Source: Selaginella moellendorffii (Eukaryota > Plantae > Lycopodiophyta). From it: DNA of 64,000 nt. Shown here piece after piece: positions 14,955 through 42,156 of this stretch. Made by a program: the position numbers and the translations under genes. The notes under the pieces are model-generated. The model ran no database searches and was not told the origin of the DNA. It saw nothing but the letters and a program-made list of their open reading frames with translations. Location of the stretch: contig NW_003314267.1 of the NCBI RefSeq assembly GCF_000143415.4, forward strand, positions 3,617,138-3,681,137, given 5' to 3'. Numbering within the stretch: the stretch's first letter is position 1; each line of letters opens with the position of its first letter.

Positions 14955-16448
14955 TCAGGAAATTTTCACTGCTTGACCAAATCTCTCCAGGTTTTCATAC
15001 GAGGAGCCACCTCTAGACACTGCTCTGCGAGCCTCCTCGCTCAGCTTCTTCACGTTAATCCTCAAATGCTCACTGTCAGTTCCCATGAATCGCTCCACCA
15101 CCTCCACAAACTCGTCCCTCGCCATCACCTCGGGAGGATCCGGCATGGTCACGCACGAGAACTTGAGACCGATCTTCCAGTCCTCCACTATCAACTTGCA
15201 GTTTAGATTCTGCTCGGCGACGCACGGCCAGCAAAGAATGGGCACCGCGGATGCTACGCTCTCGAGGATGGAGTTCCAGCCGCAGTGACTGAGAAATCCA
15301 GCGGTGGAAGGGTGGCGGAGGATGTCCACCTGAGGAGCCCAGCTCACAACCAGTCCAAAGCTCCTCACGGTCTCCTTGAAACGCTCCAGGAACTCGGGCT
15401 CCATGCCGTTGACCGACTTGGGTCGGATGGCCCAGATAAACGGACGCTGGAGAAGCCTCAGTCCCTCGGAGAACTCCTTGAACTGATCGAAGCTGAGAGT
15501 CGCGATGCTGCCCAAGGAAATGTAGAGAACCGAGCCGGGACTTTGCTTGCCGAGCCAGGATAAACTCTCGGTGTCTTCCTTCCACAAGCTTGCCTTGTTA
15601 GAGCCGGGGACCATGGTGAAAACAGGACCCACTGCGATTGCTTTGGGAGAGATGTCTCGGAGGGCTTGGAAGGTGGCACTGCCCTCGAGTTCTTCGAACG
15701 AGTTGATCAAAACCCACGACGTTGTGGCGAAGCTCTTGGCTCTAGCGTATCTGCGAGCGAATCCTGATTCGTCAATGGTAGAAAGGTCGCACGGGAGGCC
15801 CCAGATTGGCAGTGGTGACAAGCCGTCTACGTAAGTGATGTACTTTTCAATGGAACGATCTGGCGGAACGCGTTAGTGCTTCTCGAAAGAAGGACAAATA
15901 AAAAAGAAGAAAGAAGCCTTACCTTGGACTGGAACGTCTCCCTTCTCCAGCATTCGCGGAAACGAGCAATCGAGCAAAACGCAAGAGGCACTGGCGGTCC
16001 AGAACTTGACCTCTGGGATTCCGGTCCTTCTTGCTACTTCCGCGGACCACGGAAGCAACATATCCGAGATGAAGCACGAGACCGGAGGAACGAGATCATC
16101 GTCTCTGGCCATGCTCCTGATGAGCAAGCTCTCCACTGGACCCTGCATCGCCATCACCGCCTCGAAGAAGATTTGCCGCGTCTCCGGGGCCGTGAAGTCG
16201 GCCTCGCTCGCTTGGATCCCGGGGACCGTCTCGAAACGAATGCCGCCGCCATAGCCAAAGCTCTCCTCCTGCGAAACGACGTCCTTCAAGTCCCTGTGGT
16301 TGCCCTCCGTGTTGATGAAAGTTATGACGAAGCCTCGCGAGGCCAGAGTTCTGGAGAGATGGAGGAATGGAGTGATGTGGCCTAGAGTTGGAATGGGAAG
16401 AACCGCTGCGTGAGGAGCGAGCCCCTCGGCACCAGTAGAAGAACCCAT
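14955..16448 (-). CDS. Family-1 UDP-glycosyltransferase, B-type copy 2 (intron 15860-15922)
   Basis: Intact GH motif and PSPG box; GT-AG phase-1 intron. Confidence 0.93.
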
Positions 16449-16828
16449 TGACGAAGAACAAAGAAAATTCAAGCTTACTTCGTGAGTGCTGTGGAAGGGT
16501 TTCTCACATTACCTTTTCTGGATAAGCTTGAAATCGCTCCAAGGCCGAGCTTAAGAATCAGTGCGTTTTGCAAAAGGTTTTAATCTAGTGTTCTCCACAC
16601 TTCTAATCTCCTTATTGCACGCGGTGGTTCAGGAATTTAATACTCCTCTTGATTACTCCCTCAAGCCATCTATTTCTTTGGGAAGGAAAATAACACTTCC
16701 ACCAACCTATACACTTTCAAGTATCATCTTTATGTGCTCTTGGTCTGTCTGTGCATTGGCCCCGTCCTCATACCCGATGATCGTCCTGCCACCAGCTGCG
16801 GCATTGGATATAAATTACCTTATGAAGC

Positions 16829-17645
16829 TTGACGAACTTGTCCAAACTTTCATATGAAGATCCTGCCTTCTTTCACTGTTGCTCCCTGAGCAGCCTCGCT
16901 GAGCTCCTTCACATTACATCTAAAGGAATCGCCATTCTCAGCTCCCATGAGCTGCTCCACCACCTCCGCAAACTCGTCCCCGCCACCACCTTGCGAGGAT
17001 CTCTCATGGGCGAGAACTTAAGATCGATCTTCCAGTCTTCCACTATAAGCTTGCAGTTGAGATTCTGCTCGGCAACTCATTGCCAGCAAAGGATTGACAC
17101 TGCTGAAGATACACTCTCGCAGCCTGTGGAAGGATGCTGGAGGATTTCCAATTGAGGAGCCCAGCTCACAACCAGTCCAAAGCTGATCACTTGCAAGGAG
17201 AGCCTTGAAAGCCTCCAGGAACTCGGGCTCTATGCCAGGGACCAACTTGAGACAAATGGCCATTATAACTGGCCTCTAGAACTCTTCCAATCTTGCTAGT
17301 ATTTCTTTAAGCTGTTCCTTGCTCTTTAGTTTTTTTCATTTTTTGTTTTTCCATTTTTTAGTGTTTAATTCTTTTATCGTGGTTCCCCACTTTACACTCT
17401 CTTTCTTCTTATTATTTTTTCTTTGTTTTTCTTTAGTTTCTTCTCCTCGCATCAGTTTCTGACATAAGGCATCGCCTTGGAGTCTACACTAGCACATTGG
17501 CCATGGGTTCTTGCACGTGACAAAGTCCAGCACATTCCCTCATGGTTGCGTGTTTTGGAGATAGCATCCCCCAAAGGATGAAAGTGAGAGCTTGGCAGAG
17601 ATGCAAGAGTGGAGAGATGTGGCCTTGAGCTGGGAGAGAGAGAGA
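16829..17645 (-). pseudogene. Second copy of the chimeric UGT pseudogene
   Basis: Near-identical to 14064-14890 with the same lesions. Confidence 0.85.
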
Positions 17646-17708
17646 AAGAGTAATATATTCTTGAATAGAGTAGATGCTTTGAAGTTTTCTCTTAGCTTGG
17701 ATTGAAGT

Positions 17709-19202
17709 TCAGGAAATTTTCACTGCTTGACCAAATCTCTCCAGGTTTTCATACGAGGAGCCACCTCTAGACACTGCTCTGCGAGCCTCCTCGCTCAGCT
17801 TCTTCACGTTAATCCTCAAATGCTCACTGTCAGTTCCCATGAATCGCTCCACCACCTCCACAAACTCGTCCCTCGCCATCACCTCGGGAGGATCCGGCAT
17901 GGTCACGCACGAGAACTTGAGACCGATCTTCCAGTCCTCCACTATCAACTTGCAGTTTAGATTCTGCTCGGCGACGCACGGCCAGCAAAGCATGGGCACC
18001 GCGGATGCTACGCTCTCGAGGATGGAGTTCCAGCCGCAGTGACTGAGAAATCCAGCGGTGGAAGGGTGGCGGAGGATGTCCACCTGAGGAGCCCAGCTCA
18101 CAACCAGTCCAAAGCTCCTCACGGTCTCCTTGAAACGCTCCAGGAACTCGGGCTCCATGCCGTTGACCGACTTGGGTCGGATGGCCCAGATAAACGGACG
18201 CTGGAGAAGCCTCAGTCCCTCGGAGAACTCCTTGAACTGATCGAAGCTGAGAGTCGCGATGCTGCCCAAGGAAATGTAGAGAACCGAGCCGGGACTTTGC
18301 TTGCCGAGCCAGGATAAACTCTCGGTGTCTTCCTTCCACAAGCTTGCCTTGTTAGAGCCGGGGACCATGGTGAAAACAGGACCCACTGCGATTGCTTTGG
18401 GAGAGATGTCTCGGAGGGCTTGGAAGGTGGCACTGCCCTCGAGTTCTTCGAACGAGTTGATCAAAACCCACGACGTTGTGGCGAAGCTCTTGGCTCTAGC
18501 GTATCTGCGAGCGAATCCTGATTCGTCAATGGCAGAAAGGTCGCGCGGGAGGCCCCAGATTGGCAGTGGTGACAAGCCGTCTACGTAAGTGATGTACTTT
18601 TCAATGGAACGATCTGGCGGAACACGTTAGTGCTTCTCGAAAGAAGGACAAATAAAAAAGAAGAAAGAAGCCTTACCTTGGACTGGAACGTCTCCCTTCT
18701 CCAGCATTCGCGGAAACGAGCAATCGAGCAAAACGCAAGAGGCACTGGCGGTATAGAACTTGACCTCTGGGATTCCGGTCCTTCTTGCTACTTCCGCGGA
18801 CCACGGGAGCAACATATCCGAGATGAAGCACGAGACCGGAGGAACGAGATCATCGTCTCTGGCCATGCTCCTGATGAGCAAGCTCTCCACTGGACCCTGC
18901 ATCGCCATCACCGCCTCGAAGAAGATTTGCCGCGTCTCCGGGGCCGTGAAGTCGGCCTCGCTCGCTTGGATCCCGGGGACCGTCTCGAAACGAATGCCGC
19001 CGCCATAGCCAAAGCTCTCCTCCTGCGAAACGACGTCCTTCAAGTCCCTGTGGTTGGCCTCCGTGTTGATAAAAGTTATGACGAAGCCTCGCGACGCCAG
19101 CGCTCTGGAGAGATGGAGGAGTGGAGTGATGTGGCCTTGGGTTGGAATGGGAAGAACCGCTGCGTGAGGAGCGAGCCCCTCGGCACCACTAGAAGAACCC
19201 AT
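17709..19202 (-). CDS. Family-1 UDP-glycosyltransferase, B-type copy 3 (intron 18614-18676)
   Basis: PTQGHITP; exon 2 nearly identical to copy 2. Confidence 0.93.
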
Positions 19203-19381
19203 TGAACGAAGAAAAAAGCAAATTCAAGCTTACTTCTTGAGTGCTCTGGAAGGAAGGGACTATGCTGCCGTTTCTCACATTACCTCTTCTGGATTAGCTC
19301 TTACTTCAACATTACGCCACCTATACACTGTCAAATGTCATCTTTATGTCACGAATGGATATAGAATTTCCAAACCATATC

Positions 19382-20832
19382 TTATAAAACTTCCACAGCT
19401 TTGACGAACTTGTCCAAACTTTCATATGACGATCCTCCTTTCACTGCTGCTCGCTGAGCCGCCTTGCTGAGCTCCTTCACATTACGTCTAAAGGAATCGC
19501 CACTCTCGGCTCCCATGAGTTGCTCCACCACCTCCACAAACTCGTCCCTGGCCACCACCTTGCGAGGATCTCTCACGCGCGAGAACTTAAGACCGATCTT
19601 CCAGTCCTCCACTATAAGCTTGCAGTTGAGATTCTGCTCGGCAACGCACGGCCAGCAAAGGATTGGCACCGCCGAAGATACGCTCTCGAGAATAGAGTTC
19701 CAGCCGCAGTGACTCAAGTATCCACCTGTTGAAGGATGCCGGAGGATTTTCAGCTGAGGAGCCCAGCTCACAACCAGTCCAAAGCTGATCACTCTCTCCT
19801 TGAAAGCCTCCAGGAACTCGGGCTCCATGCCTGGGACCGACTTGGGACGAATGGCTAATATAAACGGCCTCTGGAGCTCCTCCAATCCTGCTAGTATTTC
19901 TTTAAGCTGTTCCAAGTCGAGCGTCCCGAGGCTGCCGAAGGATATGTAGAGAACCGACTGTGGCTTCTGCTCGTTGAGCCATGTCAGGCATTCTGTGTCT
20001 TCCTTCCAGAGGCTCGCGTTGTCTGCTAGCGAAGAAAGGAACACTGGTCCCACAGCTACAGTGTTTGGATTGATCTCTCTCAGCGCCTGGAATGCACCAC
20101 TGCCCTCGAGTTCCTCGAAAGAGTTTACCAAAACCCCCGACACTGTCGCGACGTGGTTTATTCTGTTGTACCTGCGAGTAAAACCAGGATCGTCGCTGAA
20201 AGATAGTTCGCAAGGAAGGCCCCATAGCGGCAGTGGAGACAAGCCACGGACATACGTGATTGACTTGTCGATCGAGAGATCTGGAACTCAAAGTTAGAAT
20301 CAGATACAACTCATAAAAAAGATGAAAGTTTTTTACCTCTGACAGGTATGTCTCCCTTCTCGAACATCTGAGGAACGGAGCACTCGAGCAGAATACAAGA
20401 GGCACTTGCGCACCAGAAGATAAAACTTGGAACTCCAATTCTCCTGGCAACATCTTCCGGCCACCTGAAGAGCATGTCGGAGATCAAGCACGATATTGGG
20501 GGATCTGCGCTGACTAGCTTGTCCTTGAGCAGCTTCTCGACTGGCCCTTCCATGTTGATCAAGCCTTGAGTGAAGATGAGCCGGCCTTCGTCATGAGATA
20601 AGTCAATACCAGTTCCTTGGATGCCCGGAACGGTCTCAAAACGAATGTCTAGGCCATGGCCGTCCTCCAAGGTGTTCTTCATACACTCCTGATTGGCCTC
20701 TGTGTTGATAAAAGTAATGACGAAGCCTCTCGAGGCGAGAGCTTGGGAGAGATGCATGAGTGGAGATACATGACCTTGTGTTGGAAGAGGAATTACGAAG
20801 ACGTGAGGAACGCTCTCACGGCTGGAAGCCAT
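19382..20832 (-). CDS. Family-1 UDP-glycosyltransferase, 'C-type' (intron 20281-20336)
   Basis: LPTQGHVSP; WAPQLKILRHPSTGGYLSHCGWNSILES...VAEQ. Confidence 0.92.
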
Positions 20833-20957
20833 CCAAAGTATGAGGCAACTGATGAAGAGAAGAACAGTGTCTTGAAAGAGATCCAAAGACGACAATATGT
20901 AAATAAAGATGTGGGGTGCCTCTAGTATAATTTCTGTACAGAAAGTTAGCAGGAGAA

Positions 20958-23900
20958 TCAAACGCTTAACTTTGGACGGAAGTCGGCCGAAGCGAAGCGA
21001 GCAGTGATATCATCTACGCATGCCATCCTGATTCTTTCTGGAGTGGCCGGGGTGTCCAAAAGAAACCACCCGTGAAGTCCCGTTTCAGCTCTCGCAGAAG
21101 CGATAGCTTCTTTTACTGCAAAAAGCGCCGCTGCAGCTAAGAACAGCGGGGGTTCCCCCACTGCCTTCGACGAGTGGATGGCTCTTGGATTCGGAGCATC
21201 CTGGATTTAGTCACCATATCATCAGCCAAAGTCCTATGAAGGAAAGATTCCAAACCTTTAAGAGCGAGACTCGGAAGTCAATCGGAATATCGTTTACTGT
21301 TGGCAGTTTGTAAGTTCCGGGGCCTTGAGTGAAAAGATATCCGGGCTTTATCCAAGGATGAGCTTTGTCACCCCACTTAAGTTCTTCTAGTGCTACCCAG
21401 CCGAGGCCTTGGACAAACGCACCCTCAATCTACACGTACGTAGAAACTGTTAGCAAGTAGCAACTTTTCTACTCTTCGAACCTGGCCAATATCAATAGCG
21501 GGATTCAGCGAATGTCCCAAGTCCATGACGATGTCAACACGTCTCAAGTGTGAATCACCAGTAAGACAATCTATCTCTGCCTCGGCACAAGCAGCTCCAT
21601 AAGTATAGTAGCTGAAAGGTGATCCTTTCCCTGTCTTCCAATCGAAACCAATGTCTGGTGTTATGTAAAACCCGTGTGCTGAGAGATCAATACGCTGTAA
21701 GTAACACGCCATAACCAGCTGCAATATAACAACAAAGATTAGCCAAAGAAACGTAACTTGGATTAGTACCTTCGCAAACGAGTCGTACTGAGACATCAAT
21801 GGTCTCATCCTTTCTTTGATTTGGTTGCATGCATCGATAACAGCGGCACCATACATATCAGAGCTCGCAGAAGCCGCAGTAGGCGAAGCATTTGGTACCT
21901 TACATTCCAAGACGTGGTGAGCAGAACTTGAAAGGTGAAAAGCAGCGTACCTTGTCGGTGCTTGTTTCAGATATAAATACTGAGCTTATGGGAATATCGA
22001 ACGCAGTGGCAGCGACCTGTGCGATTTTTGTGTGTAAACCTTGTCCCATTTCAACTCCACCATGTGTCACTAGAACTGTACCGTCTGTATAAACTTGGAC
22101 CAATGCACCTGCCTGGACGAGAAAATTCCGTCATTTCCACCATCAAAGGCTGCCTGATTAAACCATTCACCTGATTAATAAACTTGGTTGTAAATGATAT
22201 TCCAAACTTTGTAGGGACCATCGCTACTCCTCTTTTCTTCCACCGATTTTTCTTGTTAAATAAATCGATCTCATGCATACGTGAGGCAAGCTCACAAGAA
22301 GACTTCAACTCCGACCAAACCTGTTTTATACGACAGTTCTCGAGAACCTGGCTATAATGCAGCTCGTAACCTTCTCCTTGGAGATTAATTTCCTAAAAAA
22401 GTCAACAGTAAAAAACATAAGTTTTTGAGCGTCGGCAGCAAAAGAAAAAACGTTTTTTTAGAGATACACACCCTGATCTTTGAAGCAGGTACTCCCAGAG
22501 TTTTTGCAATGTGTTCAATCCAATTCTCCGTAACAAGCATCCCTTGAGGTCCGCCAAATCCGCGAAACGCTGTGTTGCTGGGAATGTTTGTAAAACATAC
22601 GTTTCCAAATATGCGCACGTTAGGGATCACATAAACGTTGTCCGAATGGAACATGGATCTCTCCAGAACAGCGTCCGAAAGATCCAATGAGTTGCCACCA
22701 TTGTTATATATCTGAAGGTCCAATGCCATAACTTTTCCCTCGTTTGTAAAACCAACCTTCACATTGAAGAGCGATGAATCAAAGCAACGCACACATGGAT
22801 AAATAACAAGGTACCTTGTAACGCGCAAGGAAAGCATGCCTTTGACCAGTAATTGCCATGTCCACTTCTCTGTCAAGTACTAGCTTCACCGGCCTCCTTA
22901 AGAGATATGCAGGGACGGCCGCTGCAGCTGCTTCGACAAATCCACGAGTTTCCTTTCCTCCAAATCCACCGCCAATTCGTTTTGTCTTACAAACCACCCT
23001 ATGCATTGGAATGCCCAAGACGTGCGCTACAGTATACTGGTGCTTCTGAGGTGCCTGTAGACATCAGAAACCTTGTAAGTTCTGGCCCCTTGAACGCAAG
23101 AATAGCTTACCTGTGTCGATGATAGCATCATAACCTCATTTCCACCATCCTGAATCCATACTGTTGTTCCATGCGGTTCTAAGTAAAAATGCTCCTGTCC
23201 TCCCATTTGCACAGTGCCTTCGACAATGTGATCGCATTTCCCACTGGCGAAACACTCTTGTACGTTCCCCTTCGAAAGGACTCGGGGCGCCTTCAGAAGA
23301 AAACTCTCAGCCTCAATGGCGTCTTCAATGCTCAGAATCGCAGGTAAGTCTTCGTAAACCACTTTGACCTTTAGTGCTGCGGCCCTTGCTGCATACTGAG
23401 TATCAGCAACAACAACTCCAATCACCTGGCACAGTGAAGAGCAATTAGCCATGACTAAAAAACATATATATTCCTACCTGACCAACACATGTGACAACGT
23501 TCGTTGCAAATAACTCTTCGTCATGCGCCACAGCTCCAATATCATTTCCTCCAGGAACGTCTTTTGCGCAAAAATAACCAGCGAAACCAGGAACAGTCTC
23601 CGCCTCTCGGTAGCTCACAGAAACGATACGAGCATGCGGTCTGGTACTCAAAACCAACGCACCATGCAGTCCATTGGGTGGAAGAGGCTCGTCATCAAGA
23701 TATTGTGCTTCACCAGATACCTGTTGCATTTTCAGCTCAATTTTCGTGCGAAAGAAACTGTGGTGTTACCTGAAGCTCTGCTGAAACATGAGCGATAGAC
23801 TGACCGACAGCTGATCCATCCACTATAGTTTTGAAGTTTTGCATCCCACTAGAAATGTCTCTCTTGTAAGGATCAGCTGCTGACATGAACCTTTCGGAAA

Positions 23901-35828: not shown

Positions 35829-36024
35829 AGGAAGGTTTGAGTTTTACATATACATAGCGTGTAAATACGCACTCCTTCAAGAAAACCAGTGTGTAATGTG
35901 CAGTCCAGGAATACATTAGCTTGGATTTTTTTCTCTTTGTCGTCTAACGAGTACTGTGGACTAGAAGGTAAAAGGGGGTCACATTTTCTTTGCTTGTAGG
36001 TTCCTTTGCGCTCAAGTAAAAGCT

Positions 36025-37574
36025 ATGGTGGAAAGGCCTCGGGTTGTGGCTGTGCCATTTCCTATGCAAGGCCATATAAGCCCGCTTCTTCAGCTCTCGT
36101 ATCAACTGGCTGCTGCTGGTATTGACATCACTTTTGTCAACACTTTCAGAAATCACGAGCGACTTGTGGGATCCAGAGAAGTCGTGTCTAAGGTACTTGG
36201 AACTGTTGATGTTCTTGAGCTGCTTAAGTTTTCTTTTCCTCTTTCTCTCTCCAGGAGCATTCTTCCGGAGTTATAACTTTCATGGGCATCTCCGACGGCG
36301 TTGCAGCGAAAGCCTTCGACGGAGGTTTCAACGAGTCCCTCAATGCGTCCCTCGTTGCCTCCGACGAGATGGCGAAGCCCTTTGAGGAACTTCTCTGGAA
36401 ACTGGACGGTGTTAGCTGTGTGATTTCGGACGCTTATCTTGGATGGGCTCAAGCCGTCGCGAACAGATTTGGGGTCCCCAGGGTTGCACTGTGGACGTCC
36501 AACGTTGCTTACTCCCTTGTGAATTATCATCTTCCACTGCTTGTTGAGAAAGGCTATCTTGGAGTAAAAGGTAAGAAATGACCGCATTGTTATGCATATC
36601 TGACGCTTTCCTAAACAGATCCTTCTTCTGTTGGTTTTCTCGACAACCTTGTGACTTGCGTTCCTGGGGTCGAGCCAATTTATGCTCGGGACCTTCCAAC
36701 CGTTCTTCGCTACGACTCTGGGGAAGATCCCGGCTTTGCAAACAGGATTCGCAAGATTCAAGCTCTGAAACATGCATCGTGGGTCCTCGTCAACTCCTTT
36801 GAAGAGCTAGAGAGCGCCGGAGTTGAGTCCATGAGGCGAGAGCTTGGAACGCAGAACTACGTGACAGTCGGGCCACTCCTGGTAGAAGACACAGGGGGCA
36901 GGAAGAGTCTGTGGAGCGAAGACGAGGCATGCTTGAAGTGGCTTGACTCTCAAAAGCCAGGCTCGGTTCTCTACATTTCTTTCGGAAGTATAGCCAGCAT
37001 TGCAGGTGCTCAGATGAGAAGCATTGTGAAAGGGCTGGGGGACACAAGGCAGCCTTTTCTCTGGGCAATGAGAAAAAACTTACTGGTTCCGGACTCCGAC
37101 TACTCAGAGAGATCCTTCCAGGAGTTTATGGGAGCGACTAAGGCACAAGGGCAGGGACTGATCGTGGAATGGGCTCCGCAAGTGAAAGTTCTCCAGCACC
37201 GGGCACTAGGTGGCCACCTATCACATTGCGGATGGAACTCGGTACTGGAGAGCATGGCGATGGGAGTACCGATACTCGGCTGGCCCTGCGTCGCCGAGCA
37301 GACGATGAACTGCAAGAGAATTGCGGAAGACTGGAAGATTGGGCTGAGATTCACGACCGACGACGCAAAGCAGCAGCTTGTGAGCGATGAGGAAGTGGCA
37401 AGAGTCATCAAAAAGCTGTTTTGCGAAGGCGAGGGGCGCGAGATCAAGAAAAGAGCCAGAGAGTTCTCAGCCATTGTGAAAACCGCTGTCAGCCCGGGCG
37501 GATCGTCGCACCGAAACTTGGAGAGGCTTGTCCAGGCGATCAAATTCGGAAGGCTCGGCAAGAACTCTGGCTAA
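36025..37574 (+). CDS. Family-1 UDP-glycosyltransferase, 3 exons (introns 36193-36254 and 36571-36618)
   Basis: FPMQGHISP; WAPQVKVLQHRALGGHLSHCGWNSVLES...VAEQ. Confidence 0.92.
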
Positions 37575-37647
37575 AGTGATGTCCGTACGAGTGAGCTTGT
37601 GGGAATAGGATACTGCAAAGTCAGGCTTTCTCAGTTGACCTCTGGCG

Positions 37648-40600
37648 ATGGCGCTGGCTAGAACAAGATACGAGCGTGCTCGATGGGGTGGTCGTCGGGA
37701 CACTGCGGAGAAGTCAGTTCACAGCATGAGCAGCAGCAGCCTGCAAGCGTTTTATCTCAACACTTTGCAGCTAGAGGCGGATGCAATTGAGTTTGCAGCT
37801 GGGGGGTATGGAAGCATCTTCAAAGGGACAGTGGCAACTGGTTTTCAGATCCCGGAGAGACTGGAAAGAGGCCGGTATTTGCCTTACGGCCAAAAGACGG
37901 ATGAAGCCCCGGATTTCTCCAAGCCATCCGAGAGAGTTCCTGTCGCTGTCAAGAAGATCCGGGAGCCGGAGAACGACGACGAGGTTTTGGAGATGACCAG
38001 GGAAGGAATCAACATGAGAGTTGTCCAAGGGGCAAGAAATGTGGTGACTGTCTACGGGGTTGCTTACAGCAAGGAGCTGGAATGCGTCTGTCTCGTCATG
38101 GAGCTTGTTCAAGGCCCGCAGCTGGATGCGTTTCTCAAGGCACACCATCCTCCGGTTCCAGACGCAGCTTGGTGGAAAACGAAGCTAGAGCTGTTCATGG
38201 AGCTCGTTATTGGGCTATCGGTTTGCCATCAGAATGGTGTCTACCACGGAGACTTGAAAGGCAGCAATGTGCTCGTGGTGGACGAGTCTCGGGTTCCAAA
38301 GTTGATAGACTTCGGCTTCAGTTTCCGGAAACGAGACATAGCTTACCTGAAGGAGACGATAGGTGGTTCACCGTTTTGGGTCAGTCCCGAGCTTTGCGAT
38401 CAAGACGAGCAGAAGGTGCTGCAGGAAGTGATGCGGAATCCTTATCCCTCCGACTTTTACTCTCTCGGCATGACCTTGGTTGAGATGTTTCTCGACGGGG
38501 AGGTGCCGGAACAGCTTTCAGCAGGCTTCATCGAAGAGAAAATCTACGGAGGATTTCCCGTGTCTCTGGAAGTGCCACCCGGTATGGAAGCTTTTGAGCC
38601 AGTTTTTACGAAGCTTTTCCAGGTGGTAGAGGGCTGCTGCATGTCGGATCGCGACGAGAGGATCTCCTTGCAGCAGTGTCTGGCAGAGGTGCAAGCGGCC
38701 TACGATGAGCTTTGCAACATCGGCTGCAGTTTTAATGAGGATTTTCTCCGGGATCCTTCCAAGCTTGCATCTACGGAGGCGTACACAGCAGTGCTTCCAG
38801 CTTTCAAAGCAAAGTTTCCTGGAGTTCCGGATGCTGTTTTCCTTCAACCAGCGGATAACATGGTGGTGGACACGAAGGTAAACACGCTGGTGGATTTGTT
38901 CTGCGACATGGATTACGGGGAAGGCGTAGAAAGCATCGTCAGGTGGAGGTGGTCTATTGTTAAGATCAAGCTGGACGAAGAGGTTCCTCGTTTATGTCGT
39001 CGCTGCGTGCAAGCCGGGAGTCCGAAAGCACTGAAGGTTCTGTGCTCTCGGTGGAGGGAGATTTCTAAACAAGACGAATGGCTACTTCACGAGGCTTGCG
39101 AGGCGGACAGTGCCGAAGTGCTACAAGTTCTTCTTCAGGACTTCAAGATGGACTATAATACTTGGCACCGGAGGTGGCCGCTGAAACCGCTGCACAAGCT
39201 TTCGTACCAAGGCAAAACAGAGATGATGAAGATCGTGTTGGACCGTGCGAAACTTAGTGGGAGAAGGGACTACGTGAACGACGAAATCGCGGGACGGACT
39301 CCACTATACTACGCAGTCGCTGGTGACAAGATAGACGCGGTGTTTTTCTTGCTGGAACAAGGAGCGAACTCGTTGGGCCAGGAGGACGAACTCACTAGCT
39401 CTGATTTTTTGGACAACCTGCTAGGGGCGGCTGCAGAGAGCGTGAGCTTAAATGTGATCGCAGTTCTTTCCGAGGTAAGCAGCTCGTTGAGGACTACAGG
39501 CACTGCGGTTGGGCTTGAAGGAAAGGCCGCTCAGCTTTTCCGAAACCACTATAGCAGCCGTCTTGCGTATCTCAAGATTGAAGGTGATCGCCTGCTCGAA
39601 CTGAAGAAGCACTTGGAAGAATCAAGTCGACGTGGATTGGATGCCTTCAGCTTCGGGTGTTCCAGAGAGGGAAATGCGGAAGTTTTTGAGACGATCGTGT
39701 CGATCAAAGAAACTCCCAGGGACTTGTGGAGGCACTTGATTGGGTACGGAAGCAGGGAAATGGTGGCCTATGCGTTGGATAAGCTGGGATACTTGGCTAC
39801 ATTGGACTTGATCCATCTTGCTTCAAAGCAGGGAAACTTGGAAGTCATGGACTTTCTGACAGTGCTCATGGACAGACGTAAACGGGTTGGCGAAGCAGAG
39901 AAAACTCTCAAGGAGATGCTTGGCGGTTTTCGTGAAACTGAGGAACAAGTTCTAGAGAACAAGCAACAGCTACAGGAAGATGACTTGCAGCTCGGTCAGG
40001 GGAAAGAAGAGCAAACTAAGTTTGATGGAAGTTCCAGCAGCGAAGAAAAGGTTGCCAAAGACGATTTACAGGTACCGGAAGATGAGAAATCTGGCTTACA
40101 AGTGATGGAAGAGCTCGAGGAAGATGAAGTAGAGTCCAGCAGCGAGCTTGTTACTGATGGTGGGGAACTTCCAGAGTTGAAGTTCCGGAGGATGTTCGAC
40201 TACGAATACTGGGACGTGCTCAACGAGTGGACCACGTGCAGGAACATGAACACGGAATGGATACTGGGCGAGTTCCATAGGATTTCTCCAGACTCTTGGA
40301 CGGAAACATCTCAAAAGCTGCTATTGATCGCGGCACAGCTTGGAGACGAAACGATGGTGGAGAAGTTATTGGGAAAGAAAGTATCACCGGATTTCGAAGA
40401 AGAGGATGGAGTGTCACCTTTGTACCAGTCAGTTCTGTGGGAGCATGAAGAGATAGCCCAGATGCTGCTGAGAGCTGGGGCAAACGCGAGCGACTCTTGC
40501 ATGGACGCCGCGTTGGACGTAGGAAACGGGAGCTTGGCTAGACTGCTCATCAAGTTCGGCTTCGATACAGGCAGGAAGAACGGAAGCAACCAGACTTACA

Positions 40601-40695
40601 TGGACTTGATCAAAGTCATGGACGCCAAGAAGGAGGAGTTTCGGGAGAGGTATGAGATGCCGTTTTTCGCAGCGATGCATGGTGAATTTCCATGA
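37648..40695 (+). CDS. Protein kinase (N-terminal, non-RD) fused to C-terminal ankyrin repeats; alternative start 37726
   Basis: GGYGSIF, VAVKK, HGDLKGSN, DFG, WVSPE and SDFYSLG; ankyrin motifs GRTPLYYAV..LLEQGAN, IHLASKQGNLEV and GVSPLYQSV..LLRAGAN; 1015-aa uninterrupted ORF. Confidence 0.88.
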   Translation: MALARTRYERARWGGRRDTAEKSVHSMSSSSLQAFYLNTLQLEADAIEFAAGGYGSIFKGTVATGFQIPERLERGRYLPYGQKTDEAPDFSKPSERVPVAVKKIREPENDDEVLEMTREGINMRVVQGARNVVTVYGVAYSKELECVCLVMELVQGPQLDAFLKAHHPPVPDAAWWKTKLELFMELVIGLSVCHQNGVYHGDLKGSNVLVVDESRVPKLIDFGFSFRKRDIAYLKETIGGSPFWVSPELCDQDEQKVLQEVMRNPYPSDFYSLGMTLVEMFLDGEVPEQLSAGFIEEKIYGGFPVSLEVPPGMEAFEPVFTKLFQVVEGCCMSDRDERISLQQCLAEVQAAYDELCNIGCSFNEDFLRDPSKLASTEAYTAVLPAFKAKFPGVPDAVFLQPADNMVVDTKVNTLVDLFCDMDYGEGVESIVRWRWSIVKIKLDEEVPRLCRRCVQAGSPKALKVLCSRWREISKQDEWLLHEACEADSAEVLQVLLQDFKMDYNTWHRRWPLKPLHKLSYQGKTEMMKIVLDRAKLSGRRDYVNDEIAGRTPLYYAVAGDKIDAVFFLLEQGANSLGQEDELTSSDFLDNLLGAAAESVSLNVIAVLSEVSSSLRTTGTAVGLEGKAAQLFRNHYSSRLAYLKIEGDRLLELKKHLEESSRRGLDAFSFGCSREGNAEVFETIVSIKETPRDLWRHLIGYGSREMVAYALDKLGYLATLDLIHLASKQGNLEVMDFLTVLMDRRKRVGEAEKTLKEMLGGFRETEEQVLENKQQLQEDDLQLGQGKEEQTKFDGSSSSEEKVAKDDLQVPEDEKSGLQVMEELEEDEVESSSELVTDGGELPELKFRRMFDYEYWDVLNEWTTCRNMNTEWILGEFHRISPDSWTETSQKLLLIAAQLGDETMVEKLLGKKVSPDFEEEDGVSPLYQSVLWEHEEIAQMLLRAGANASDSCMDAALDVGNGSLARLLIKFGFDTGRKNGSNQTYMDLIKVMDAKKEEFRERYEMPFFAAMHGEFP

Positions 40696-40898
40696 CGAAG
40701 GTACTGGTCTGTCAATAGTGTCTGTGTCCTAAAAATCTTCTTTTCCTTGCAAGGCCTGATACTATCATAGCCGAAGTCTTTTACGAATTCCTTGCTAGAG
40801 CATCTGGCAGGATCGCTCTCATCCGGGAGCGAGCTTCCTGGATTTCTGCAAGCTCGTGTGGAATGGATTAACTTCTCGCGATCAACATGACCTTTTTA

Positions 40899-41365
40899 TT
40901 GCCGAGAGAGTGTTCAAAGACTCTCCAGGCGATCGGTAAGTCTCTTGCAAAGTTTAGTGCTGTTCCTGACAGTATTTTTCTTTTTTCTTTTCCAGCAAAG
41001 CTCGATGCACTTAGAAGATCAACATGACCGATGAATTGCCGAGAGATTGTTCAAAGACTCTGGAGGCGATCGGTAAGTCTCTTGCAAAGTTTAGTGGTGT
41101 TCCGGACGGTGTTTTTCTTTTTCTTTTCAGCAAGGATCTTTGAATTGCCGAGAGTGTTCAAAGACTCTGGAGGCGACTGGTAAGTCTTTTGCAAAGTTTA
41201 GCGGTGTTCCGGACAGTGTATTTCTTTGTCTTTTCAGCAAAGCTCGATGAACTTCTCGCGACGCAAATGAGATTGACCTCTGTATTTCCTAGAGTATGTG
41301 CAAAGACTCTCGAGGCGATCGGTGAGTCTCCTGCAAAGTTTAGTGGTGTTCCTGACGTGTTTTTC
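40899..41365 (+). repeat. Four tandem exon-intron-like cassettes
   Basis: Core caaagactct..aggcga..g|GT(A/G)AGTct..tgcaaagtttag..gtgttcc.gac repeated four times; three complete 58-60-nt GT..CAG units. Confidence 0.85.
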
Positions 41366-41526
41366 TGTGGTCGATCTATGCGCAAAACTCCGAGAAGACA
41401 CCCCACCCCGTACAGATATCGTACGTGGAATATACCCAACTTACCGTTGGGCTATAGTGTTCTTCGTGGGTGGAATCCATTCGTTCTCGAAGCGAGCGAG
41501 CGAGCGATCGATCGAAGGAGAGAGAG

Positions 41527-42156
41527 ATGGGCGGCGGCGGCGACAAGAAGAAGCTCATGGAACAGGTATTCCATCTCAAGCTCACATCCAAGGGGCTGGT
41601 CCGGCAGGCCAAGAAGTGCGAGGCCGAGGAGGCCAAGGAGAAGCTCAAGATCAAAAAGGCCATGGAGAAGGGCAACGCCGACGGCGCGCGCGTCTACGCC
41701 CAGAACGCCATCCGCAAGCACGCCGAGCAGCTCAACTACCTCCGCCTGGCGTCGCGGCTGGACGCGGTGGTGGCGCGCCTGGCGTCGCAGGCCACCAGCC
41801 AGGGCGTGTGCGGCGCGCTGGCGGGCATCGTCGCCTCCCTCCACGGCGCGCTGGCGGTGGGCAACATGCAGAAGGTGTCGCGCACCATGGACGCGTTCGA
41901 GCGCGCCTTCGTGGGCGTCGAGGTCCAGGCGGCGTTCGTGGAGGGCGCCATGGCCGGGAGCACGTCCCTGGCCACGCCCGAGGAGAGCGTCAGTGGGCTC
42001 ATGCTCCAGGTCGCGGATGCGCACGGCCTCGAGGTGGGCGCGCAGATGCCGCAGCCGGGCATCCATCGGGTGGCCGTGGCTGCGCCGCCGCCACGATCTG
42101 GTGTGTCCGAGGATGAGCTCTGCCGGAGGCTCGCCCAGCTCAAGAACAAGAGCTGA
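41527..42156 (+). CDS. VPS46: ESCRT-III-related CHMP1/Did2/VPS46, intronless
   Basis: LKLTSKGLVRQAKKCE..EKLKIKKAMEKGN.DGARVYAQNAIRK..EQLNYLRLASRLDAV; C-terminal MIM-like DELCRRLAQLK. Confidence 0.92.
   Translation: MGGGGDKKKLMEQVFHLKLTSKGLVRQAKKCEAEEAKEKLKIKKAMEKGNADGARVYAQNAIRKHAEQLNYLRLASRLDAVVARLASQATSQGVCGALAGIVASLHGALAVGNMQKVSRTMDAFERAFVGVEVQAAFVEGAMAGSTSLATPEESVSGLMLQVADAHGLEVGAQMPQPGIHRVAVAAPPPRSGVSEDELCRRLAQLKNKS

What the first reader, a model, noticed from the sequence alone, without database searches (positions are those of the whole stretch)
37648..40695. Intronless non-RD kinase with C-terminal ankyrin repeats, an atypical domain order for a plant
Seen: a 3-kb uninterrupted ORF with a complete kinase (VAVK, HGDLKGSN, DFG, SPE), then a helical region and at least 6-7 degenerate ankyrin repeats split by a very acidic linker. 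There is no signal peptide or transmembrane segment. Known: the usual plant ankyrin-kinases (ILK/Raf-like) carry ankyrins N-terminally and are intron-rich, whereas kinase-then-ankyrin is the order of animal RIPK4/ANKK1. An HGDLK catalytic loop is common in fungal TKL-like kinases, and non-RD kinases are associated with innate immune receptors. Inference: a lineage-specific cytosolic sensor-kinase, possibly horizontally acquired or retroposed. This is the best candidate here for an undescribed signalling system.
Basis: partly seen in the sequence, partly recalled or inferred. Interest (0 to 1): 0.75.

Follow-up and report, generated by a model that had tools for sequence, protein, structure and literature searches.

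The report
Kinase-ankyrin gene of seed-free plants
This spikemoss gene is a real, expressed, intron-free kinase with a long ankyrin-repeat tail. It belongs to an undescribed family found only in mosses, liverworts, clubmosses and probably ferns, and in three bryophytes that family sits next to a relative of the animal cell-death protein MLKL, so it may be the kinase half of an ancient plant cell-death or immune switch, though this is untested.

Summary
Window 37648-40695 (+) is an uninterrupted 1015-aa ORF in Selaginella moellendorffii (LOC9642796). It encodes a complete non-RD kinase (VAVK, HGDLKGSN, DFG, SPE), a conserved helical region, and about 11-13 ankyrin or ankyrin-like repeats split by an acidic linker.

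RNA-derived contigs from four studies cover the ORF without any splice. The two haplotypes differ with dN/dS 0.27.

The gene is not lycophyte-specific. The same kinase-then-ankyrin, intron-free gene occurs in Riccia, Sphagnum, Ceratodon and Diphasiastrum, and in Pteridium transcripts. No seed-plant member was found.

The kinase does not group with the plant RLK-type or Raf-type kinases sampled. Its nearest relatives are non-RD kinases of arbuscular mycorrhizal fungi (96/94 support).

In Riccia, Sphagnum and Ceratodon the family member lies 5-7 kb from a full-length MLKL homologue (helical bundle plus dead kinase). Selaginella has that homologue too, but unlinked.

Best reading, inferred only: this is the active-kinase partner or sensor of an MLKL-like executioner. 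It is RIPK-like in logic, but not a RIPK family member.

The scan had already noted kinase-ankyrin/MLKL-like pairs on other DNA of this genome.

The parts
37648..40695 (+). Complete intron-free CDS (1015 aa plus stop) of the kinase-ankyrin gene (S. moellendorffii LOC9642796, this haplotype)
   Evidence: ORF. Same gene call in GCA_000143415.2. RNA contigs cover it without a joint. dN/dS between haplotypes is 0.27.
37648..37782 (+). Variable N-terminal region (aa 1-45)
   Evidence: Poorly conserved in A1. pLDDT is about 30.
37783..38703 (+). Protein kinase domain (aa ~46-352), including a variable ~35-aa insert between the Gly-rich loop and VAVK
   Evidence: Pfam Pkinase 97-346. Family alignments. 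Foldseek hits to the FGFR, RIPK2, BRAF and NEK7 kinase domains.
37942..37953 (+). VAVK (aa 99-102; ATP-anchoring Lys102)
   Evidence: Regex. Invariant in the family.
38245..38268 (+). Catalytic loop HGDLKGSN (aa 200-207): non-RD, of Ser/Thr type
   Evidence: Regex. H, G, D, L, K, G and N are invariant in all family members.
38308..38391 (+). Activation segment from DFG to SPE (aa 221-248)
   Evidence: The pattern DFGxSF...Y...GGSxFWxSPE is conserved, and the AM-fungal relatives share DFGxS...GGT..W.APE.
38704..39075 (+). Family-specific conserved middle region (aa 353-476): helical, and ankyrin-like from about aa 400
   Evidence: Invariant P391, V393, P401, N404, M405, F418, C419, G426, V427, C453, V454 and W469. 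Helical hairpins in the AF2 model.
39076..39882 (+). First ankyrin-repeat block (aa 477-745, about 8 repeats)
   Evidence: Pfam Ank_2 480-574. PDB AnkB/DARPin matches. DSSP helices.
39883..40287 (+). Acidic, disordered linker (aa 746-880). It is specific to this gene and variable in relatives.
   Evidence: 27 E and 10 D in 136 residues. pLDDT below 50 over residues 757-881. The region is gapped in A1.
40288..40617 (+). Second ankyrin-repeat block (aa 881-990, 3 repeats)
   Evidence: Pfam Ank_4 893-941. DARPin alignments over 890-969. The C-terminal LLIxxGFDTG motif is conserved.
40698..40753 (+). Small 3'UTR intron starting a few bases after the stop codon
   Evidence: RNA contig joint 40697>40751, GT..AG, skipping 53 nt, in runs X1 and X10 (X2: 40698>40751). 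Sequence shown.

Best explanation
Shown: this is a functional, transcribed, intron-free gene for a cytosolic protein. The protein has a catalytically complete non-RD Ser/Thr-type kinase at the N-terminus, a family-specific helical region, and a long ankyrin solenoid interrupted by an acidic disordered linker. It belongs to a small, undescribed family found in seed-free land plants (liverwort, mosses, lycophytes, probably ferns). The kinase domain's closest relatives are non-RD kinases of Glomeromycotina that carry Sel1/TPR-type repeats.

Inferred mechanism: the ankyrin solenoid binds a partner or ligand and controls the kinase. The kinase then phosphorylates and switches on an MLKL-like protein (N-terminal helical bundle plus dead kinase), as RIPK3 switches on MLKL in animals. 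The output would be membrane damage, cell death or immune signalling. In bryophytes the two genes are kept side by side. In Selaginella the MLKL homologue (P0272) exists but lies on another scaffold, so here the link rests on homology and shared phyletic range only.
For: Gene reality. RNA-derived contigs from 4 studies splice out both UGT introns and then cover the CDS with no internal joint. The haplotype pair has dN/dS 0.27, dS 0.064, 40 nonsynonymous and 41 synonymous differences, and conserved synteny.

Family. Searches show that every full-length member is kinase-then-ANK and that all named members are bryophytes, lycophytes or Pteridium. The CDS is also intron-free in Diphasiastrum, Sphagnum and Ceratodon.

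Kinship. The best single-domain hits outside the family are Dentiscutata, Gigaspora and Geosiphon kinases at 96-99 bits, against 66 bits or less for everything else. Family plus AM fungi form a clade at 80/98 and 96/94. The AM-fungal kinases are also non-RD and have a similar activation segment.

Linkage to MLKL-like genes. In Riccia the kinase-ANK gene is at L006 10001-13108 and the MLKL_N+pseudokinase gene at 18539-20795. In Sphagnum jensenii a homologous gene lies 7 kb downstream (tblastx 1e-60). In Ceratodon the pair is divergent, 6.8 kb apart, and present twice. Orientation differs between species and no other neighbour is shared. The MLKL-like family's best PDB match is full-length mouse MLKL, aligned over residues 19-461 (102 bits). 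Its catalytic Asp and DFG are lost, and an invariant Ser sits in its activation segment. Its phyletic range matches that of the kinase-ANK family: Riccia, Ceratodon, Diphasiastrum and Selaginella, with no seed plant.
Against: No MLKL-like gene lies in this 64-kb window, next to the Selaginella paralogue, or next to either Diphasiastrum copy. The Selaginella MLKL homologue has no kinase-ANK neighbour. Linkage was seen in three bryophytes only, and mosses and liverworts share ancestry, so part of it could be inherited synteny. The kinase shows no specific affinity to RIPKs: in the PDB profile search B-Raf scores 72 bits, TNIK 69 and RIPK3 64. No RHIM tetrad is present. No binding, phosphorylation or phenotype data exist. 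The AM-fungal relatives examined have no MLKL-like neighbour.
Confidence: 0.4

Rival explanations
1. It is a stand-alone cytosolic signalling kinase whose ankyrin repeats act as a scaffold, for example in stress or developmental signalling, like other TKL or MAP3K-like kinases. On this view it has no functional tie to MLKL-like proteins, and the bryophyte adjacency is inherited synteny or chance.
For: It is unlinked to any MLKL-like gene in both lycophytes. Generic kinase groups score about equally in PDB searches. The haplotype dN/dS of 0.27 is ordinary purifying selection, without a clear diversifying signal.
Against: The adjacency survives a change of orientation between Riccia/Sphagnum (tandem) and Ceratodon (divergent), and the pair was duplicated as a unit. 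No other neighbour is shared. Both families have the same unusual phyletic range.
Confidence: 0.33
2. It is an intracellular sensor or guard. The variable ankyrin solenoid binds a microbial molecule or a guarded host protein, and the non-RD kinase relays this into immune signalling independently of MLKL-like proteins, through other substrates.
For: The non-RD catalytic loop is invariant. From established knowledge (Dardick and Ronald 2006), non-RD kinases are over-represented among innate immune receptors. The ankyrin blocks evolve faster than the kinase (dN/dS 0.41-0.46 against 0.23). Repeat number and linkers vary between members. The paralogue is tandemly duplicated with one decayed copy, a birth-and-death pattern.
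Against: No ligand, no expression response and no positive selection (dN/dS above 1) was shown. There are few copies per genome, unlike expanded receptor families.
Confidence: 0.2
3. It is a decaying retrocopy, a recent horizontal insert or a contaminant, with no function in the plant.
For: The CDS is intron-free in an intron-rich neighbourhood, and the nearest kinase relatives are fungal.
Against: It is present with conserved neighbours in both haplotypes. It is transcribed in 4 studies. dN/dS is 0.27. Its G+C (0.52) and GC3 (0.60) are like the adjacent UGT. Intron-free orthologues exist across bryophytes and lycophytes.
Confidence: 0.02

Closest known systems
Animal RIPK3-MLKL necroptosis pair (and the RIPK family in general)
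   Same: An active TKL-like kinase is genetically associated with a full-length MLKL homologue (helical bundle plus pseudokinase). The pseudokinase has a conserved Ser in its activation segment. The proposed kinase-activates-executioner logic is the same.
   Different: The kinase shows no specific sequence affinity to RIPKs. There is no RHIM and no death domain or CARD. The repeats are ankyrin. The association is by gene neighbourhood in bryophytes, not by shown interaction. In the tree the family groups with AM-fungal kinases.
Animal RIPK4 / ANKK1 (kinase, intermediate region, C-terminal ankyrin repeats); DAPK1 also has kinase before ankyrins (from my own knowledge)
   Same: Same domain order, with a non-conserved or disordered stretch within the C-terminal half.
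   Different: Orthology was not demonstrated and no RIPK4 sequence was in the tree. The family-specific middle region has no counterpart that I could test. The distribution is seed-free plants only. Convergent architecture is the simplest reading.
Plant ankyrin kinases (ILK / Raf-like group C; PMC5376563)
   Same: They combine ankyrin repeats with a TKL-type kinase in a cytosolic plant protein.
   Different: In ILKs the repeats are N-terminal, and those genes occur across land plants. Here the repeats are C-terminal and far more numerous, and the kinase is non-RD. It does not group with the plant Raf-type (Dioscorea EDR1-type) or RLK-type representatives (AU p 0.005).
Glomeromycotina expanded kinase / Sel1-like gene families (PMC8647823)
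   Same: They are the closest kinase domains found: 96-99 bits and a clade at 96/94. They are also non-RD (HSD, HFD, HLD), with a similar activation segment. They share the kinase-then-helical-repeat layout: Geosiphon P0236 has Sel1 repeats and Dentiscutata P0210 has a weak, sub-threshold TPR_12 match.
   Different: The repeats are Sel1/TPR, not ankyrin. The family-specific middle region is absent. A long stem branch (about 1.1 substitutions per site) separates the two groups. No MLKL-like neighbour was seen at the two fungal loci examined.
IRAK1 / Pelle-type non-RD kinases (HGDIK catalytic loop; from my own knowledge)
   Same: They have an HGD catalytic loop and an association with innate immunity.
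   Different: The plant RLK/Pelle-type representatives form a separate, well supported clade (100/99). A tree that holds the family together with them is rejected.

Membership tests
Active eukaryotic protein kinase (ePK) | Beta-3 Lys, alpha-C Glu, catalytic Asp and Asn, DFG, APE, alpha-F Asp and the alpha-H/I Arg are all present | tested here: met
   K102, E119, D202, N207, D221-F-G, P247-E248, D269 and R338 are present here and invariant in the family. The first Gly of the Gly-rich loop is Ala. Activity itself was not measured.
Non-RD kinases | The residue before the catalytic Asp is not Arg | tested here: met
   HGD is found in all 14+ family members.
RIPK family (RIPK1-4, ANKK1) | The kinase domain groups specifically with RIPKs | tested here: inconclusive
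   In the PDB profile search RIPK3 scores 64 bits, below B-Raf (72) and TNIK (69). No RIPK sequence could be put in the tree.
RIPK family (RIPK1/3) | A RHIM motif ([IV]Q[IVLC]G core) for oligomerisation | tested here: not met
   No such tetrad occurs in 10 family members.
RIPK4/ANKK1 architecture | N-terminal kinase followed by C-terminal ankyrin repeats | tested here: met
   Pfam and the AF2 model. This concerns architecture only and is not evidence of common descent.
Plant ILK / ankyrin protein kinases | N-terminal ankyrin repeats before a Raf-like kinase | tested here: not met
   Here the repeats are C-terminal. ILK repeats are N-terminal (PMC5376563). The family does not group with the plant Raf-type representative.
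Plant RLK/Pelle (IRAK) family | The kinase domain nests within the plant RLK/Pelle clade | tested here: not met
   RLK-type representatives form a separate clade at 100/99. The constrained tree is rejected (p-AU 0.0048; the group was named after the tree was seen, and the representatives are few).
Kinase plus MLKL-like two-gene module (as in RIPK3-MLKL) | The kinase gene is physically linked to an MLKL homologue | tested here: not met
   This is not met for this gene. There is no MLKL-like sequence in the 64-kb window, and Selaginella P0272 lies on another scaffold. It is met for the orthologues in Riccia, Sphagnum and Ceratodon.
Kinase plus MLKL-like two-gene module | The kinase binds or phosphorylates the MLKL-like protein | not testable with these tools
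   The one complex prediction returned no verdict. This needs biochemistry.
Seed-free land-plant kinase-ANK family (defined here) | HGDLKGxN kinase, then a conserved middle region (PxNM...FC...GV...CV...W), then C-terminal ankyrin repeats, in an intron-free CDS | tested here: met
   P0001 scores 655 bits against the A2 profile over all 498 positions, though it is one of the eight sequences the profile was built from. Members outside the profile score 400-620 bits. The family clade is 100/100.

The most novel reading that the evidence does not exclude
Early land plants had a necroptosis-like two-gene switch: a non-RD kinase with a repeat sensor (this family) and a true MLKL-type executioner. 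The switch is still linked in bryophytes, was dispersed in lycophytes and lost in seed plants. Its kinase is shared, by ancient horizontal transfer in one direction or the other, with arbuscular mycorrhizal fungi, the oldest fungal partners of plants.
Probability: 0.25. Interest if true: 0.85.

Novelty: new variant of a known kind. Interest (0 to 1): 0.6.

Why it matters
Regulated necrosis through a kinase and MLKL is regarded as an animal invention, and the known plant MLKLs have no identified activating kinase. This is a conserved, expressed kinase family that is genetically coupled to full-length MLKL homologues in three bryophytes and absent from seed plants. It offers a concrete, testable candidate for an upstream kinase. 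It also opens a route to asking whether kinase-triggered membrane-damaging cell death was part of the immune toolkit of the first land plants. The kinship with kinases of arbuscular mycorrhizal fungi bears on gene exchange during the oldest plant-fungus symbiosis. For genome annotation, it gives a name and a set of diagnostic motifs to proteins now labelled 'uncharacterized'.

Tried and rejected
1. Complex prediction on the Ceratodon pair (kinase plus middle region, 531 aa, with MLKL-like P0264, 443 aa) returned no verdict: score 0.01 and my alignments were not used. It counts neither for nor against binding.

2. The whole-protein word search was swamped by ankyrin hits and found only the query itself. 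Searching the kinase region alone was needed.

3. The protein-atlas search gave only generic kinase clusters. Foldseek against the PDB gave only generic kinase and ankyrin matches.

4. I looked for an MLKL-like gene in the window, at the Selaginella paralogue loci, at both Diphasiastrum loci and at two AM-fungal loci. None was found.

5. I looked for a kinase-ANK gene next to the Selaginella MLKL homologue. None was found.

6. The search of earlier findings by sequence was blank.

7. I could not identify which Selaginella kinase-ankyrin gene the earlier notes place head-to-head with an MLKL-like gene. It is not this gene or its paralogue.

8. A paper reporting a plant-derived kinase in Rhizophagus (PMC5982333) concerns a different kinase, whose best donor hit is a different, unrelated plant accession (XP_001698359.1).

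9. I considered and rejected a recent HGT, contaminant or retro-pseudogene origin.

10. The spliced MLKL-like genes of Riccia and Sphagnum were searched exon by exon by reference.

Full report
**1. The observation**

The ORF listing finds a single uninterrupted ORF at 37648..40695 on the + strand, 1015 aa long and starting at ATG. It is the longest ORF in the window.

Pfam gives Pkinase at residues 97-346 (E 2.7e-27), PK_Tyr_Ser-Thr, Ank_2 at 480-574 (8e-20) and Ank_4 at 893-941. PDB sequence searches hit DARPins and ankyrin-B for the C-terminal half, and many kinases at 25-30% identity for the N-terminal third.

The remaining catalytic and structural residues (E119, N207, D269, R338) are invariant across relatives. 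The only blemish is that the first glycine of the Gly-rich loop is Ala.

No 19-residue window is hydrophobic enough for a membrane segment; the maximum is 1.40.

An AF2 model built on 7 sequences has mean pLDDT 61.8. It is weak in the N-lobe and good in the repeats. It shows helical hairpins running without a break from about residue 395 to 755. A disordered stretch follows at 757-881, with 37 D/E in the 136-residue linker, and then three more repeats at 881-990.

**2. Where it is, and whether it is alive**

The exact protein is encoded on scaffold GL377571.1 of Selaginella moellendorffii GCA_000143415.2. The other haplotype (GL377582.1) carries the allele LOC9642796 (P0093, 1016 aa). It has the same neighbours: LOR, ParA, Elf1, UGT, this gene, then Endonuclease_1, Lipase_3 and Bax-inhibitor-1.

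Between the haplotypes the CDS has 41 synonymous and 40 nonsynonymous differences, giving dS 0.064 and dN/dS 0.27. By region dN/dS is 0.23 for the kinase and 0.41-0.46 for the two ankyrin blocks. That is purifying selection, looser on the repeats.

Contigs of four public runs from four studies were laid on 36000-41900. All four splice out the two introns of the upstream UGT gene (36190>36253 and 36568>36617, GT..AG), so they derive from RNA. The same contigs run on through the UGT stop codon and the 74-nt spacer, and into the kinase ORF as far as 38472. Other contigs tile 38592-40701. No joint falls inside 37648-40695.

The CDS is therefore transcribed and intron-free. These are contigs, so neither expression level nor transcript ends can be read from them. 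G+C (0.52) and GC3 (0.60) resemble the neighbouring UGT. A pseudogene, a contaminant and a recent insertion are excluded.

**3. Relatives**

A whole-protein search was swamped by ankyrin proteins. Scoring the kinase region alone found proteins with the same kinase-then-ankyrin layout:
- a S. moellendorffii paralogue (P0030/P0094, 52% identity in the kinase);
- two Pteridium aquilinum transcripts from EukProt;
- a Diphasiastrum complanatum tandem pair;
- Sphagnum jensenii and S. magellanicum;
- peat metagenome proteins.

After these there is a gap of about 40 orders of magnitude in E-value.

An exhaustive profile search used the kinase plus middle region against 1.84 billion representatives. 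It added Riccia sorocarpa, a second Diphasiastrum locus, a third Pteridium transcript and unnamed assemblies. All the unnamed members are closest to Sphagnum, Ceratodon, Diphasiastrum, Selaginella or Riccia. A Ceratodon purpureus member was found through its neighbour.

Every full-length member is kinase-then-ANK. No seed-plant, algal or hornwort member appeared among hits that cover the profile.

The CDS is also intron-free in Diphasiastrum (2991 nt for 996 aa; 3006 nt for 1001 aa), Sphagnum (2511 nt for 836 aa) and Ceratodon (a 1050-aa ORF). The gene is therefore not lycophyte-specific. It is a family of seed-free land plants. The fern record rests on a transcriptome only.

**4. What kind of kinase**

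When per-domain scores are recomputed locally, family members score 400-760 bits. The next best hits are Glomeromycotina proteins at 96-99 bits: Dentiscutata erythropus P0210, Gigaspora margarita P0216/P0260 and Geosiphon pyriformis P0236. Everything else scores 66 bits or less, including oomycetes, Chromera, Tritrichomonas, bacteria and seed-plant kinases.

The fungal proteins are a kinase followed by Sel1 repeats (Geosiphon) or by a weak, sub-threshold TPR_12 match (Dentiscutata). They are also non-RD (HSD, HFD, HLD) and share the activation-segment pattern DFGxS...GG[ST]..W.[AS]PE.

Maximum-likelihood trees of kinase domains (LG+C20) gave these results:
- the family is a clade at 100/100, on a long stem of about 1.1;
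- its sister group is the three fungal kinases, at 80/98 in the first tree, and at 96/94 after two very long rows were removed and more plant sequences were added;
- the plant RLK-type representatives form their own clade at 100/99, and a tree forcing the family together with them is rejected (p-AU 0.0048);
- the Dioscorea EDR1-type Raf kinase also lies elsewhere.

In PDB profile searches B-Raf (72 bits), TNIK/MINK (69) and RIPK3 (64) score about equally. So the domain is TKL-like but belongs to no solved group.

There are caveats. The outgroup sample is what the capped hit list offered. The stem is long. AM fungi also have hugely expanded kinase and Sel1-like families (PMC8647823), which raises the chance that one of them looks close. 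An ancient transfer between AM fungi and early land plants, in either direction, is a reasonable hypothesis but is not shown.

**5. A partner**

Earlier notes of this scan mention kinase-ankyrin genes next to MLKL-like genes elsewhere in this genome and in 'a liverwort and a peat moss'. I tested this for the present family.

- **Riccia.** The member P0111 (L006 10001-13108, +) is followed 5.4 kb downstream by a gene whose product carries MLKL_N and a kinase domain. MLKL_N scores 35.6 bits against a cut-off of 27.
- **Sphagnum jensenii.** A homologue of that gene (tblastx summed E 1e-60) lies 7 kb downstream of P0099 on the same strand. One exon gives a weak MLKL_N match and others give kinase matches.
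- **Ceratodon.** The MLKL-like gene P0264 has a family member 6.8 kb upstream on the opposite strand. That member is 47% identical to the Sphagnum protein over the kinase and middle region. The whole pair occurs twice, 32 kb apart.

Orientation differs between species and no other neighbour is shared.

The MLKL-like proteins form their own small family: Riccia, Ceratodon, Diphasiastrum, Selaginella P0272 and peat and other assemblies, with no seed plant. Their profile aligns end to end with full-length mouse MLKL, residues 19-461, at 102 bits, the best PDB hit. They are pseudokinases: HRD has become HRN/K/S, DFG has become FGF, and the beta-3 Lys context is lost. They keep an invariant Ser in the activation segment. 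In the kinase tree their pseudokinase domain falls next to the family plus AM-fungal clade, but only at 87/80 and between long branches.

In the lycophytes the genes are not linked:
- no MLKL-like sequence lies in this window, at the paralogue loci or at either Diphasiastrum locus;
- Diphasiastrum's MLKL-like gene is on another chromosome;
- Selaginella's P0272 is on scaffold GL377587 and has no kinase-ANK neighbour.

The spliced bryophyte genes were searched exon by exon by reference.

**6. How it most likely works**

These points are shown:
- the gene is active-looking, non-RD, cytosolic, expressed and under selective constraint;
- it belongs to a family conserved since before bryophytes and vascular plants diverged;
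- the family is physically coupled to full-length MLKL homologues in three bryophytes;
- both families have the same phyletic range.

The following is inferred. The ankyrin solenoid binds a partner or ligand and gates the kinase. The kinase then phosphorylates the MLKL-like pseudokinase, for which the conserved activation-segment Ser is a candidate site. This releases the helical bundle to act on membranes, by analogy with RIPK3 and MLKL.

I put this at about 0.4. The main rival (0.33) is a scaffolded signalling kinase unrelated to MLKL-like proteins. A sensor or guard role that signals through other substrates gets 0.2. A dead or foreign gene gets 0.02.

A complex prediction for the Ceratodon pair gave no verdict and is not used either way.

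**7. Comparison with what is known**

The domain order matches animal RIPK4/ANKK1, and DAPK1 also has its kinase before its ankyrins. Membership of the RIPK family is not supported, because there is no specific sequence affinity and no RHIM.

It is not a plant ILK/ankyrin kinase, since those have N-terminal repeats (PMC5376563). In my trees it is not an RLK/Pelle kinase either.

Full-text searches combining Selaginella, Physcomitrella, Marchantia, bryophytes, kinome, ankyrin and MLKL found no description of the family or of the pairing. Chia et al. 2024 list MLKL only as an NLR-associated class (PMC11218826). RefSeq calls the protein 'uncharacterized'.

I rate it a new variant of a known kind: a kinase plus MLKL-type module, and a kinase-ankyrin architecture, in a new lineage with a new kinase subfamily.

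**8. Verdict**

The gene is atypical, undescribed and fungal-like, but it is ancient and widespread among seed-free plants rather than lineage-specific. The 'sensor' role is unproven.

The scan had already flagged kinase-ankyrin/MLKL-like pairs on other DNA of this genome (s1-433176, s1-432081) and a twin of this finding (s1-420354). The gene studied here is the unlinked copy.

Interest 0.6.

Noticed in passing
window 40697-41397: RNA contigs show a 53-nt GT..AG intron that begins a few bases after the kinase-ANK stop codon. Four more mini-introns of 58-76 nt (40934>40995, 41071>41130, 41178>41237, 41320>41397) lie before the Snf7/CHMP1-like ORF at 41470-42156. The two haplotypes carry different gene models here (209-aa Snf7 against a 297-aa protein with no Pfam hit). 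It is unclear whether these exons are the 3'UTR of the kinase gene or the 5' part of the next gene.
   Followed up: partly
window 36025-38472: In all four runs one RNA contig covers the spliced UGT gene, its stop codon at 37574, the 74-nt spacer and the first 825 nt of the kinase-ANK CDS. This could be overlapping UTRs, read-through, or an assembly join of two adjacent transcripts. The promoter and 5' end of the kinase gene are unknown.
   Followed up: no
L002 3480-6428 and L010 16065-19002 (S. moellendorffii GL377586 / GL377729): The paralogue locus holds a second, tandem full-length copy of the kinase-ANK gene within a duplicated PRK/CYTH - kinase-ANK - PPR block. In L010 that copy is split over three reading frames, so it is broken. 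In L002 only a 104-aa kinase piece is annotated.
   Followed up: partly
P0030 residues ~45-52 (paralogue LOC112343566): The Gly-rich loop of the paralogue reads RQRYSC instead of GxGxFG, so this copy may not bind ATP normally. The gene model may also be truncated at the N-terminus, since the allele P0094 is 11 aa longer.
   Followed up: no
L011 6189-6611 (S. moellendorffii GL377587): An aegerolysin-family gene (a pore-forming / membrane-binding protein family) lies 3.4 kb upstream of the Selaginella MLKL homologue P0272. Three genes with no Pfam hit follow P0272.
   Followed up: no
L012 and L013 (Ceratodon purpureus CM026438.1, 32 kb apart): The kinase-ANK / MLKL-like pair is present twice, and the MLKL-like protein (P0264) is identical in both copies. 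This points to a recent segmental duplication of the pair as a unit.
   Followed up: partly
window 14955-20961, minus strand: There are three tandem repeats of an ORF pair of about 288 aa plus 191-216 aa (14955-16472, 17709-19202, 19382-20961). This looks like a tandemly triplicated two-exon gene. It was not examined.
   Followed up: no
trees: Within the family, the Pteridium transcript P0031 is sister to the two Selaginella genes, while Riccia is sister to Diphasiastrum. This does not follow the species tree. It implies old paralogues with differential loss, transfer between plants, or contamination of the fern transcriptome.
   Followed up: no
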